Shown: in pieces, positions 6,050 through 48,455 of the stretch | Layout of the letters: the number at the start of each line of letters is the position of its first letter | Position numbering within the stretch: position 1 is the stretch's first letter | Assembly: GCF_902713615.1 (NCBI RefSeq) | Contig: NC_052171.1 | Coordinates: forward strand, 14,635,958-14,699,957 | Reading direction: 5' to 3' | Source of the DNA: Scyliorhinus canicula | Lineage: Eukaryota | Length of the DNA stretch: 64,000 nt | Program-made: the position numbers and the translations under genes | The notes under the pieces: generated by a model | What the model was told of the DNA's origin: nothing | The model's database searches: none | What the model saw: only the letters and a program-made list of their open reading frames with translations

Positions 6050-8520
6050 TGAGATGTCGATGTGGGGGAAGGGATCATGGGTGGCAGAGAGGTCGGATGA
6101 GAAAAAGGGGGGAACGCAAATGGAGAAAAGGTAAGGAAACGTGGGATAACATAGTGGGAAGAGTGGTACGAAAATATACATAGAGAAAGAAAGGAATCAA
6201 TAAATAGTAAAATACAGTTAAAATGATATAAATTGAAAATAATGGGTTGAAATGGGGTAGAGCAAAGCATCTGAAGTTTTTGAATTCGATGTTGAGACCG
6301 GAAGGCTGTAGCGTTCCTAACTTGAAGATGAGATGCTGGTTTTCCAAGTTATGTTGAGCTTCACTGGAACATTGCAACATGCCAAAAACAAACATGTGGG
6401 AACGGTAGCAGGGTCTTGCATTAAAATGGAATGCAACGGGAAGGTCAGAGTCCTGAATGCGCATAGGCCGAATGTGCTAAGGAAATAGATGCCCCAGTCC
6501 ACGTTTGGTCTCTCTGATATAGACGAGACAACCTTGGGAGTAGTGACTGCAATAGACGAAATTGAAAGAGGTGCAAGTGAACCGCTGCTTTTCCTGGAAT
6601 GAATGTTTTGGGCCGTGATGTAAACATGGAAGAGGTAAACATTGCAAGGGAAGGTGCCGTGGATGATGTGAGTGGTTTTGGGTATGATGGAGTGGACTAG
6701 ATTAACCTGGAGGGAACGGTCTATGTGGAATGCTGACAGACGGAATGAAGGAAAGATGTGTTTGGTGGTGGCATCACGCTGAAGATCGCGAAAACGGCGG
6801 AGGATTATGTTTTGTATTCGGAGGCTGATGGGGTGAAATATCACAACGAGGAGGACTCTATTCGTGTTATGTGAGGTAGTGGAGGGGGCGCGGGTAGTGG
6901 CAGTGGAGATGGGATGCACACTTTTGAGGGCCCTGTCAAAAACTGAAGATGGGAAATCACGGTTTTCGGAAATCACATTTCCGAAGCACCATCTAGGAAA
7001 GTGGCATCATCAGAACAAAAGCGACGGAGATGAAGGCACTGAGAGAAAGGGATGGAGACCTTACACAGTGTTAGGTGCGAAGAATGTAGTCCAGATAGCT
7101 GTCAGTCGGCTACCAATGGATATTAGTAGATTGTTTATTGCCGGAAATGGAGACCGAAAGCTTAAGGAAGGTACGTAAAGTGTCTGAGATGCACCAGGTG
7201 AAAGTGATTGCAGGGTGGAAACTGGAAGCGAAGTTGATAACTTTTTACTGCTCCGGACGTGATCATTAAGCAGCACGAAAATAGTTATCAATGCATTGGT
7301 AAAGGATTGTAGGCGTGGACAAGAAATGTCCCAGATATCCCACAGAAAGGAAAGCGTCGCTGGGAAACATGCGGGTAACCATTGCTACGCATTTGATTTG
7401 GAGAAAGTGGAATGAGCTAAAGGAGAAGTTGTTGAGAGATAGAACAAGTTCCGCCAGATGGAGCAGGGTGGTGGTGCATGTGAATTGTTCAGCCTGGTGT
7501 GGGATGGAGATGTAGAGAGATTACACTTCCATGGTGAATATGAGGGGGTTAGGGCTTGTGCGCTGGAATCTGTCCGTCTGACGCAGGGCATCAGAGGAAT
7601 CTCGGGTGTAGGTCGGGAGGAAATGCACCAGAGGAGTGAGGATTAGTTAAGGTAAGAGGAAATAAGTTCGGTGGTGCAGGAATATGTTGCACAATGGGCC
7701 TAAAGTCCTTTTTGTGGATTTGGGATGTACGTTAAAGCGGGCTGGCCGGTGTTGAGAGACTATGAGGTTGGAAGCTTGTGGGGAAGGGCACAGGGGAAAT
7801 TAGGTCGCTAACAGTGTTGGAGATAATGGATTGATGTTCAGTGGTCTGTTGGGAGGTGGGGGAATGTATCTGAGAGGTGGCGCTCAGCCTCTGCGAGGCA
7901 GCGTTCATAGACATTTCATAGAATTTACAGTGCAGAAGGAGGCCATTCAGCCCATCGAGTCTGCACCGGCTCTTGGAAAGAGCACCCGACCCTATCCGCA
8001 TAACCCAGTAACCCCACACAACACTAAGGGCAATTTTGGACACTAAGGACAATTTATCATGGCCAATCCACCTAACCTGCACATCTTTGGACTATGGGAG
8101 GAAACCGGAGCACCCGGAGGAAACCCACGCACACACGGGGAGGATGTGCAGACTCCTCACAGACAGTGACCCAAGCCGGAATTGAACCTGGAACCCTGGA
8201 GCTGTGAAGCGATTGTGCTATCCACAATGCTACCGTGCTGTTCAGTACACCAGTCGACATGAATGCCCCGTCTGTCGGCATGTTTAATGACAAAGTCGGT
8301 GTTGGATCTGACGGTCTGAAGAGAGGAAAGTTCGGAAGGAGACGGTTGGAATAGGTGAGGGGGCTGAAAATTTAAGACGGCAGATGTCCCGTCGACAGTT
8401 GCCAATTAAATGAACGAGGCCAAGTAATTGAATGTAAGATTGAGCAGTCATTTGATTGAGGTTGTTCCCAAATTTCGGCAGAGTCACCGAAGAAGCTGAC
8501 AGAGGAAATTGTGGAGACAG
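6050..8520 (-). mobile_element. Penelope-like element (RT + GIY-YIG), decayed, interrupted by a SINE at 7908-8240
   Basis: ORF fragments RVLLVVIFHPISLRIQNIILRRFRDLQRDATTKHIFPS and the C-terminus HFNARP...QHLIFKLGTLQPSGLNIEF are typical of the PLE GIY-YIG region; RT remnant near 7300-7430; multiple frameshifts. Confidence 0.8.
7908..8240 (-). mobile_element. HE1-like V-SINE, subfamily B
   Basis: Head CAGCACGGTAGCATTGTGGATAGC, V core, tail TGCACTGTAAATTCTATG; flanked by a short GTTCA direct repeat. Confidence 0.9.
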
Positions 8521-46274: not shown

Positions 46275-46566
46275 CAAATGGGACACAAGGAAAAGGCTGA
46301 AATGTGGATAACATTTGAAGATCCATCCGGAACTTTGTAAAGGGCGGGAGGCACTGCCTGTGTCTCAAGTGGCATATTCCTGAAACCAAATCTTGCGAAG
46401 TGAAAAAGAGAGAAGCTAGCTAAAACTCATTTCCAGGTAGAAAATCCCAGAATTGGCCTGCTGACTTTCAAACTTCTTATCGTTGCTGGCGGCCAATTCG
46501 AATTGTTCTATTATTATTATTATACATATACATGTCTACATAAACATTTCTGGAACAAGCCTTTCC

Positions 46567-46610
46567 ATTCACCTGAAGAAGGAGCCGTGCTCCGAAAGCT
46601 CGTGTTTGAA
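46567..46610 (+). ncRNA. Minimal type I hammerhead ribozyme motif
   Basis: ttcac-CTGAAGA-a-GGAGC cgt GCTCC-GAAA-GC-TC-gtg: conserved core, 5-bp stem II and palindromic AGCT helix III. Confidence 0.75.
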
Positions 46611-46872
46611 ACAAACCTGTTGGACTTTAACCTGGTGTTGTAAGACTTCTTACTGTGCTCACCCCAGTACAACGCCGGCATCTCCACATCATGGCTACCA
46701 TTGACACCGCAAACTGCCGGCTCAAAGTGGAGAGGATCTCCAGGAAGATCGCGCATATAGACACTGACATTCAGTTTCTACAAAGCTTTGATGATTTGAT
46801 TGCCTGCAGGTGCTCGCATTCCGGGGCATCTCTGACTGTGTCTATATAAACATTTCTGGAACAAGCCTTTCC

Positions 46873-46916
46873 ATTCACCTGAAGAAGGAGCCGTGCTCCG
46901 AAAGCTCGTGTTTGAA
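46873..46916 (+). ncRNA. Minimal type I hammerhead ribozyme motif (second copy)
   Basis: Identical to 46567-46610, 306 nt downstream. Confidence 0.75.
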
Positions 46917-47394
46917 ACAAACCTGTTGGACTTTAACCTGGTGTTGTAAGACTTCTTACTATTATTATTATATACTGCATAGATTCCAGGTCACTACTGA
47001 GAATACTTCTTGCTCCCTGTCATGTATTTCTTGGACTTGTTTTCCAATTTTGATCAGCTATTTCACTCAGAAACAGATAAGCTTGCTCATCTCTGTCCCT
47101 TAGACCCAATGCTTCTGGAGGATGTTACTAATTATTGCAAGGGACTATTTAATATTTAATGTCTTAATTCGTTGGCGAGCCTCTGTTGGTTACAGTCAGT
47201 ACCGGTTACAAGGCCCATTTCCGTTGCAAGATCTGTATCAGTTGGTGGGACTACAACATTTCGGGTACTTCTCTATTTCGGGCTGTCGGTTTCGTTATTG
47301 AATCTGCATGTAATAGATGGTCTGTATCAGCAGGACTTTATGCTTCAAGAAAGCAACTATTTTCATTACTTTTGCTCAGTTTGCATGTGATACA

Positions 47395-48455
47395 CAGATC
47401 TGTAAAGCGGCAGTTAGTATTGGGGAAGCACTGGGGCTGCAGAAGAACTTGGACAGGCTAGGAGATTGGGCAAATACGTGGCAGATAGAATATAATGTGG
47501 AAAACAATGAGGTTATGCACTTTTGAAGGAGGAGTTGTGGCGTGGACTATGTTCTAAATGGGAAAAGCATCGGAAATCAGAAGCACTAGTGGGATTCGGA
47601 GCCCTTGTTCAATATTCACTTAAGGTTAACATGCATGTTCAGTCGGCAGTTAGGAAGGCCAATTCAATGATAGCATTCATGTTGAGAGGGCTAGAAAAGA
47701 AGACCATAATGTACTTCTGAGGCTATATAAGGCTCTGTTCAGACTACATTTGGAGTAGTCTGAGCAGTTTTTGGGCCTTGTATCTAAGGAAGCATGTGCT
47801 GGCCTTGGAAAGTGTCCAGAGGAGGTTCACAAGAATGACTCCTGGAATGAAGAGCTTGTCGTATGAGGAACTGCTGAGGACTCTGGTGCAGTAATCGTTG
47901 CAGTTTAGAAAGATGAGGGAGGATCTTATTGAAGCTTACAGGATACTGAGAGATACTTTAGGTGAATTCACCTAGGATGGAGCTGTGCTCCGAAACCTAG
48001 TGATTCGAAAAAAATCTGTTGGACTTCAACCTTATGTTGTGAGGCTTCTTACTGAAATTCTTACTGTGCTGACCCCAATCCAACGCCGCGATCTCCACAT
48101 CAAGGATATTGAGAGGCCTGGATAGAGTGGAAGTGGAGATAATGTCTCCACTTGAACAAAAAACTAATACCAACAATACAATCTCAGATCCTTCCAAACA
48201 CAGATGAGGCGGAATTTCTTAAGCCAGCGATTGGTGAATATGTGGAACGTTTTTGCCGTAGCAGGCTGTGGAGGCCTACTCACTGAGTGCCATGAAGACA
48301 GAGATAGATAGGTTCTTGATTAATAAGGGGTCATGGGTTATGAGGAGAAGACACGAGAATGCGGATGAGAAAAATATCAGCGATGATTGAAATGCGGAGC
48401 AGACACGATGGGCTGAGTGGCCTAATTCTACTCCTATGTCTTATGGTCTTGTGGC
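47395..48455 (+). mobile_element. Old CR1 3' fragment carrying a PLE-derived insertion
   Basis: LQKNLDRLGDWANTWQIEYNV and LESVQRRFTRM; tail TCTTATGGTCTT. Confidence 0.85.
47953..48102 (+). mobile_element. Solo Penelope pLTR with degenerate hammerhead
   Basis: Homologous to 46567-46690; flanked by the 13-bp duplication AGGATAC/TTGAGAG (47940-47952 and 48103-48115). Confidence 0.75.

What the first reader, a model, noticed from the sequence alone, without database searches (positions are those of the whole stretch)
46526..46960. Tandem-hammerhead, retrozyme-like mini element predicted to release a 306-nt RNA
Seen: two ~120-bp direct repeats each contain an identical minimal hammerhead (CUGAAGA, GGAGC/GCUCC stem II, GAAA, palindromic AGCU helix III, cleavage after C46601 and C46907). 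Between them is only a ~31-codon PLE-like ORF start plus ~50 nt. The unit is flanked by an AT-rich target-site-like duplication and is almost unmutated. Established: Penelope-like elements carry minimal hammerheads thought to cleave as dimers, and animal non-LTR retrozymes produce small circular RNAs from tandem hammerheads. Inference: a young non-autonomous PLE derivative whose two ribozymes could pair in cis and excise a 306-nt monomer able to circularise. Caveats: stem I is short and there is an extra A before stem II; a 5'-truncated PLE insertion could give a similar layout.
Basis: partly seen in the sequence, partly recalled or inferred. Interest (0 to 1): 0.78.

Follow-up and report, generated by a model that had tools for sequence, protein, structure and literature searches.

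The report
Gene-less mini Penelope retrotransposon copy in shark
This is a young 0.43-kb copy of a shark Penelope-like jumping gene that has lost almost all of its protein-coding middle and kept the two end repeats, each with a small hammerhead ribozyme motif. This kind of element is already described, and no test available here could show that it cuts itself or forms an RNA circle.

Summary
Two 122-nt direct repeats (46533-46654 and 46839-46960, one mismatch) lie 306 nt apart. Each carries the same minimal type-I hammerhead motif, with predicted cuts after C46601 and C46907. A 13-bp AT-rich duplication flanks the insert. A motif scan found only these two hits in 64 kb and none in 200 simulated windows.

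The first 31 codons of the internal ORF match the N-termini of shark Penelope-like element (PLE) proteins from whale shark and Mustelus. The match stops at 46783, so about 2.7 kb of ORF is missing.

The layout is the standard PLE partial tandem (pseudo-LTRs). The extra A before stem II is a published, conserved trait of PLE hammerheads, not a defect. An old copy at 47953-48102 ends 37 nt further on, which fits the known PLE "tail".

The retrozyme reading (self-cleavage, 306-nt circle) stays untested. The monomer is not unusually structured (z = -1.3), and published PLE hammerheads cut poorly.

Animal retrozymes as PLE derivatives, including in a cartilaginous fish, are already published. This scan also noted a sister mini copy on other DNA of this genome (s1-249181). 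Verdict: a new member of a known kind, of low interest.

The parts
46512..46524 (.). Left copy of the 13-bp target-site duplication (tattattattata), inside an (ATT)n microsatellite
   Evidence: Direct reading. It is identical to 46960-46972.
46525..46532 (+). Eight filler bases at the 5' junction. They are not templated by the unit (they differ from 46831-46838).
   Evidence: Alignment of the two repeat starts.
46533..46653 (+). Left pseudo-LTR: the 3' part of a 5'-truncated upstream unit. It contains a TATA-like box (TACATAAA at 46543-46550).
   Evidence: the repeat finder family D1; blastn.
46566..46608 (+). Left minimal type-I hammerhead motif. Helix I: 46566-67 and 46570-72 with 46602-04 and 46607-08. 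Core CUGAAGA: 46573-79. Unpaired A: 46580. Helix II: 46581-93. GAAA: 46594-97. G15.2/C16.2/U16.1: 46598-600. C17: 46601.
   Evidence: The features match the published PLE min-HHR consensus (PMC4209133).
46654..46690 (+). AC-rich 5' leader, equivalent to the PLE 'tail'. It lies between two 3'-end (reverse-transcription start) positions used by this family.
   Evidence: The young copy ends at 46959/60 (equivalent to 46653/4). The old copy at 47953-48102 ends at the equivalent of 46691. A+C is 25 of 37 bases. The tail concept comes from PMC11167929 and PMC8557442.
46691..46783 (+). First 31 codons of the PLE ORF (N-terminal helix). The reading frame then runs on through unrelated sequence to a stop at 46847-49.
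   Evidence: phmmer hits P0001-P0005 cover query residues 1-31/33. Supported by tblastn and the alignment A2.
46784..46838 (+). Deletion junction (46784-46786) followed by about 52 nt. This stretch is presumably the element's 3' region just upstream of the repeated part. Its origin is not shown.
   Evidence: Protein homology ends at 46783. A Mustelus mini copy (P0004) aligns from 46836 onward.
46839..46959 (+). Right pseudo-LTR with a TATA-like box (TATATAAA at 46849-56). It ends at the family's upstream 3' terminus (…cttac).
46872..46914 (+). Right minimal hammerhead motif, identical to the left one. C17 is at 46907.
46960..46972 (.). Right copy of the target-site duplication
47953..48102 (+). 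Old, degenerate 150-bp copy of the same family: a 5'-truncated pLTR plus tail. Its hammerhead core is mutated. It has its own 13-bp TSD at 47940-52 and 48103-15.
   Evidence: blastn at 76-83% identity; alignment A1; TSD read.

Best explanation
This is a recent insertion of an internally deleted, gene-less copy of an active shark Penelope-like element (PLE).

Shown: a 306-nt unit is represented 1.4 times. The unit consists of the pLTR with a minimal hammerhead, a 37-nt AC-rich leader, ORF codons 1-31 and about 52 nt of 3' region. The 1.4-fold representation produces two 122-nt pseudo-LTRs.

Inferred mechanism: a PLE reverse transcriptase/GIY-YIG endonuclease, supplied in trans, nicked an (ATT)n tract. 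It began cDNA synthesis at the family's upstream internal start site (…cttac). It copied a template that spanned two hammerhead sites and ended 8 filler bases short of the left target copy, leaving a 13-bp TSD.

The roughly 2.7-kb ORF deletion was either already in the template RNA (a propagating non-autonomous lineage) or was made by a template jump during that one reverse transcription. I rate these two options about equal.

The hammerheads are the family's standard pLTR motif. If they act at all, they would cut as a weak, probably protein-assisted double hammerhead formed between the two copies. This is inferred, not shown.
For: - The repeats, their spacing and the TSD are as described.
- The hammerhead motif is non-random: 2 sites observed against 0 in 200 simulations.
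- The motif carries all four non-descriptor traits listed for PLE min-HHRs: a nucleotide between 9 and 10.1, the G10.1-C11.1 pair, palindromic 15.2-16.2 and a short helix I (PMC4209133).
- ORF residues 1-31 match N-termini of shark proteins. Those proteins continue into the PLE-diagnostic DKG motif and an RT domain, PF00078 (DKG in PMC8557442).
- The second family copy in the window ends 37 nt further downstream, matching the 30-40-bp PLE tail between two RT start sites (PMC11167929).
- Insertion into AT-rich or microsatellite DNA is typical of PLEs (PMC11167929, PMC8557442).
- A Mustelus asterias protein (P0004) reads from the same ORF start, after 44 codons, straight into the pLTR hammerhead region. 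ORF-less mini copies therefore recur with different junctions.
- Earlier scan notes report a 2984-nt full-length unit and a 310-nt-unit mini copy in this genome. I did not check these.
Against: - No full-length copy of this family could be fetched.
- No other copy with this exact junction was seen in the window, in the protein searches with the junction-spanning ORF or in metagenome contigs. Lineage and one-off origin remain unresolved.
- GIY-YIG was not demonstrated for the relatives, because the length limits of the search excluded full-length ORFs.
Confidence: 0.82

Rival explanations
1. A true non-LTR retrozyme. The 306-nt unit belongs to a multicopy lineage whose transcripts are cut by the paired hammerheads and ligated into a 306-nt circle. 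PLE RT then copies the circle by rolling-circle reverse transcription, and the 1.4-unit insert is the footprint of that process.
For: - The unit length of 306 nt lies within the published 170-400 nt range, and the element has tandem type-I hammerheads and a long TSD (PMC7229834).
- A more-than-unit insert is what a circular template predicts (PMC4209133).
- It keeps exactly the parts needed in cis in the anole PLE: the pLTR, the RT start region and the ORF 5' end (PMC11167929).
- Retrozymes are reported as PLE derivatives, including in one Chondrichthyes species with a mean consensus length of 363 bp (bioRxiv 10.64898/2026.07.22.740005).
- A sister mini copy with a 310-nt unit is noted elsewhere in this genome.
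Against: - There is no RNA evidence.
- The hammerhead is the minimal PLE type, not the canonical retrozyme type. Such motifs cut poorly in vitro (PMC4209133), and no reads began or ended at the cleavage site in anole (PMC11167929).
- The monomer fold has z = -1.3, so it is not highly self-paired.
- A linear read-through transcript of a tandem gives the same 1.4-unit insert.
- Only 95 nt of ORF are kept, whereas the anole protein-binding region needs the first 172 nt.
- The Mustelus mini copy has a different junction.
Confidence: 0.12
2. A full-length PLE (pLTR-ORF-pLTR) inserted here and later lost about 2.7 kb through a genomic deletion.
For: The end structure and the TSD are identical to what a full-length insertion would leave.
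Against: - The insert is very young: 1 mismatch in 122 nt between the repeats and a perfect TSD. This leaves little time for a second event.
- Mini copies with a similar unit size are noted elsewhere in the genome and in Mustelus. That favours deletion at the RNA or reverse-transcription stage.
Confidence: 0.05
3. Assembly artefact: reads from several PLE copies collapsed to give a chimeric short element.
For: PLE tandems are known to trouble assemblies (PMC8557442).
Against: The 13-bp TSD is clean, the flanks are unique and there are no N runs in the window.
Confidence: 0.01

Closest known systems
Penelope-like elements of the canonical EN+ type (Penelope/Poseidon/Neptune) with pLTR min-HHRs (Cervera & De la Pena 2014; Frangieh et al. 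2024)
   Same: - Partial-tandem pseudo-LTRs.
- A minimal type-I hammerhead with an unpaired base before helix II and a palindromic 15.2-16.2.
- An AT-rich or microsatellite target with a long TSD.
- Two alternative 3' ends about 37 nt apart (the tail).
- The ORF N-terminus is homologous to RT-encoding shark ORFs that carry the DKG motif.
   Different: - This copy has lost everything after codon 31, so it has no RT or endonuclease.
- Here the two 3'-end sites lie just upstream of the ATG, not 111-118 nt inside the ORF as in the anole element.
Animal non-LTR retrozymes (Cervera & de la Pena 2020; Li, Clavereau & Pollet 2026 preprint)
   Same: - A short (306-nt), non-coding unit repeated head to tail.
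- A type-I hammerhead in each unit.
- A long TSD.
- Descent from PLE terminal sequences, and presence in cartilaginous fish.
   Different: - Only 1.4 units are present, not an array.
- The hammerhead is the minimal PLE variant, not the canonical or salamander-type motif.
- No linear or circular RNA evidence is available.
- The monomer is not highly self-paired.
- It still carries a recognisable piece of the PLE ORF.
Non-autonomous PLE derivatives such as MRC1/Chlamys in Chlamydomonas (Craig et al. 2021)
   Same: ORF-less elements that form pLTRs and head-to-tail inserts and resemble the ends of the autonomous family.
   Different: - They belong to a different PLE clade that has no canonical hammerhead.
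- Multicopy status is shown there but not here.

Membership tests
Penelope-like element (PLE) | Direct pseudo-LTRs produced by partial-tandem insertion | tested here: met
   Two 122-nt repeats, 99% identical and 306 nt apart.
Penelope-like element (PLE) | A single ORF with a telomerase-like RT (DKG motif) and a GIY-YIG endonuclease | tested here: not met
   This copy keeps only codons 1-31. Relatives that share the N-terminus carry DKG and PF00078 RT. GIY-YIG was not examined. The copy is therefore a derivative, not an autonomous member.
Penelope-like element (PLE) | A minimal hammerhead motif in the pLTR | tested here: met
   The descriptor scan gave 2 hits against 0 expected. The traits match PMC4209133.
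Penelope-like element (PLE) | An optional 30-40-bp tail, i.e. two 3'-end positions | tested here: met
   The young copy ends at …cttac. The old copy at 47953-48102 ends 37 nt further on. The concept is from PMC11167929 and PMC8557442.
Penelope-like element (PLE) | An AT-rich or microsatellite target with a TSD | tested here: met
   A 13-bp TSD in (ATT)n.
Animal non-LTR retrozyme | A short non-coding unit (about 170-400 nt) in head-to-tail copies, each with a type-I HHR | tested here: met
   A 306-nt unit, 1.4 copies and two HHR motifs. This is the minimum possible number of copies.
Animal non-LTR retrozyme | Expression as linear and circular monomer RNA | not testable with these tools
Animal non-LTR retrozyme | Self-cleavage of the HHR (alone or as a dimer) | not testable with these tools
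   Only a secondary-structure check was possible. The literature reports low activity for this motif class (PMC4209133).
Animal non-LTR retrozyme | A multicopy family sharing the same unit | tested here: inconclusive
No second copy with this junction was found in the window, in the protein searches with the junction-spanning ORF or in metagenome contigs.
Animal non-LTR retrozyme | A highly self-paired monomer RNA | tested here: not met
   MFE -85.6 kcal/mol, z = -1.30, and 10 of 100 shuffles fold as well.
Rfam hammerhead families (types I, II, III, HH9, HH10) | A covariance-model match | tested here: not met
   No hammerhead hit at the gathering threshold or at E<=10. The minimal variant has no closed helix III.

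The most novel reading that the evidence does not exclude
The 306-nt unit is a living shark retrozyme lineage. It would be trans-mobilised by the 3-kb PLE, processed by a cis double hammerhead into a circular RNA, and reinserted by rolling-circle reverse transcription. On this reading the 1.4-unit insert is a direct footprint of the circle, and the retained 95 nt of ORF defines the minimal RT-recruitment signal.
Probability: 0.12. Interest if true: 0.45.

Novelty: new member of a known kind. Interest (0 to 1): 0.2.

Why it matters
The copy is a tidy natural 'minimal construct' of a PLE. It keeps only the pLTR with its hammerhead, the AC-rich start region for reverse transcription and 95 nt of ORF. 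If such copies are mobile, they mark the cis-requirements for PLE mobilisation in a vertebrate. They would also be convenient substrates for testing whether PLE min-HHRs cut as dimers and whether circles form. As a discovery it adds little. Hammerheads in pLTRs were published in 2014, animal retrozymes in 2020, and their derivation from PLEs, including in a cartilaginous fish, in a 2026 preprint.

Tried and rejected
- Rfam gave no hammerhead hit at the gathering threshold or at E<=10.
- Pfam on the 52- and 64-aa ORFs gave only sub-threshold noise.
- The word search with the 52-aa junction-spanning ORF found no candidates. The search with P0004 residues 80-175 gave only 3 proteins.
- Exact scans of metagenome contigs for the junction 24-mer and for the hammerhead 24-mer found 0 matches. 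This is uninformative, because shark DNA is not expected there.
- The PDB sequence search with P0008 found nothing.
- The atlas search gave only DUF8422/RVT_1 clusters, which are no more than a lead.
- CpG observed/expected is 0.61 in the element, the same as the window average, so it cannot be used as an age marker.
- A chance motif was considered and rejected.
- Simple 5' truncation was considered and rejected, because it cannot join the ORF start to the 3' end.
- A spliced-template origin of the deletion was considered. It could not be tested without the full-length sequence.

Full report
**What is there.** The window holds two direct repeats of 122 nt, at 46533-46654 and 46839-46960. They are 306 nt apart and differ at one base, C46546 against T46852. 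Each repeat contains CUGAAGA, one unpaired A, a 5-bp helix II (GGAGC/GCUCC with a 3-nt loop), GAAA and GCUC.

The monomer minimum-free-energy fold forms helix II and a short helix I of 3 bp, a 2x2 internal loop and 2 bp. I wrote a descriptor for the published minimal hammerhead. It requires the core boxes, an optional base before helix II, a helix II of 4-8 bp, a pairable 15.2/16.2, U-H, and a helix I of at least 3 bp. It hit only these two sites on both strands of the 64-kb window and none in 200 first-order Markov simulations.

Rfam's hammerhead models do not match at the gathering score or at E<=10. That is expected, because the motif has no closed helix III.

**Borders.** The insert sits in an (ATT)n tract. 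A 13-bp duplication (tattattattata) is present at 46512-46524 and 46960-46972. Eight bases at 46525-46532 are filler.

**What the inside is.** An ATG at 46691 opens a 52-codon frame.
- A full HMMER scan of 1.84 billion representative proteins returned five proteins matching residues 1-31/33 at 74-82% identity, with nothing matching beyond that point.
- Three come from whale shark (Rhincodon typus) and one from Mustelus asterias. The fifth has only an ENA source with no organism given.
- A further whale-shark relative, P0008, found, continues from the same N-terminus into an ...IKPADKGG... (DKG) motif and the start of an RT.
- Eighty-nine relatives of that protein, from Chiloscyllium, Mustelus, Scyliorhinus, Heptranchias, whale shark, amphioxus and molluscs, carry precomputed PF28514 (DUF8422) and PF00078 (RVT_1).
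- The DKG motif is a diagnostic PLE motif (PMC8557442).
- The alignment shows the window ORF following the family up to ...DIQFLQ and then diverging, where the relatives read RCKKAEKIPKGLQ.

Earlier notes of this scan give 2984 nt for the full-length unit in this genome (not verified by me). That would make the deletion about 2.7 kb. I could not fetch a full-length copy, so the origin of 46784-46838 is inferred, not shown. I take it to be the element's 3' region upstream of the repeated part.

**The layout is the ordinary PLE layout.** PLE insertions are typically partial tandems: a 5'-truncated upstream copy followed by a unit, which creates pseudo-LTRs. Minimal hammerheads lie in those pLTRs (PMC4209133, PMC8557442, PMC11167929). 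Here a 306-nt unit is represented 1.4 times.

[quoted passage not shown] The others are G10.1-C11.1 and palindromic 15.2-16.2. All of these are present here.

**A second family copy supports the PLE reading.** At 47953-48102 lies an old copy, 76-83% identical, with a mutated hammerhead core and its own 13-bp TSD (aggataYtgagag).
- It is a 5'-truncated pLTR that runs on past the …cttac terminus, through the 37-nt leader, to the A of the ATG.
- The family therefore uses two 3' ends 37 nt apart.
- This fits the 30-40-bp 'tail' of PLEs, which Frangieh et al. showed lies between two internal reverse-transcription start sites in an AC-rich stem-loop.
- The leader here has 25 of 37 bases as A or C.

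**How it most likely arose and works.** The structure is shown; the mechanism is inferred. A PLE RT/endonuclease made elsewhere nicked the AT-rich tract and started cDNA synthesis at the upstream start site. It copied 428 nt of a template containing two uncut hammerhead sites, or a circle, and stopped.

The ORF deletion was either already in the template or arose by a template jump in this one event. One Mustelus protein (P0004) reads 44 ORF codons and then passes straight into the translated hammerhead region (HSPDEGAMLQKL against HSPEEGAVLRKL here). Mini copies therefore recur with different junctions. This shows that deletions arise repeatedly, but it does not exclude lineages. I rate lineage and one-off origin about equal.

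**The retrozyme claim.** The geometry allows a double hammerhead between the two copies, with a 4-bp AGCU/AGCU helix III and swapped 3-bp helices I. The arguments against giving it weight are these:
- The 306-nt monomer folds no better than shuffles (z = -1.30).
- Min-HHRs showed low activity even as dimers or trimers.
- The anole PLE hammerhead cut only with the element's protein, was dispensable for insertion in vitro, and left no read ends in RNA-seq.
- A linear read-through of a tandem gives the same 1.4-unit product as a circle.

**Novelty.** The relevant ideas are already published:
- hammerheads in pLTRs, and the circle or rolling-circle idea, in 2014 (PMC4209133);
- animal non-LTR retrozymes of 170-400 nt, with PLEs as the suspected mobilisers, in 2020 (PMC7229834);
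- retrozymes as non-autonomous PLE sequences, including one Chondrichthyes species with a mean consensus of 363 bp, in a 2026 preprint (10.64898/2026.07.22.740005);
- non-autonomous PLE derivatives that form pLTRs, in Chlamydomonas.

This scan has also noted a sister element on other DNA of the same genome (s1-249181). This copy is a new member of a known kind. I score its interest as low.

Noticed in passing
window 47953-48102 (TSD 47940-47952 and 48103-48115): An old 150-bp copy of the same PLE family, consisting of pLTR plus tail, with a decayed hammerhead core. It is inserted in another repeat that looks like the 3' part of a LINE; that identification is from memory and was not tested. It carries a 12-nt duplication (…cttactgaaattcttactg…) exactly at the upstream 3'-end site.
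   Followed up: partly
window 46755-46769 and 46833-46847: A 15-nt inverted repeat (13 of 15 bases complementary) brackets the deletion junction, 16 nt and 47 nt away from it. In a full-length RNA this pairing would bring the two breakpoints close together, which could favour a template jump. About 0.04 such pairs are expected by chance within a 306-nt unit. This is unexplained.
   Followed up: partly
window 46543-46550 vs 46849-46856: The only difference between the two pLTRs lies in a TATA-like box: TACATAAA on the left and TATATAAA on the right. A start about 30 nt downstream of the left box would fall at the 5' strand of helix I. Transcripts from the element's own promoter might therefore lack a complete left hammerhead.
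   Followed up: no
window ~7000-7800, minus strand: A degenerate RT remnant of another PLE-like family. Weak tblastn matches to P0005 and P0001 include an …FTMEV*SLYISIPH… stretch.
   Followed up: no
window 46691-46849: The deletion leaves an open 52-codon frame: 31 PLE N-terminal residues plus 21 others, ending in a stop inside the right pLTR. I could not test whether the last 21 codons are the natural C-terminus, which would make the deletion in-frame.
   Followed up: no
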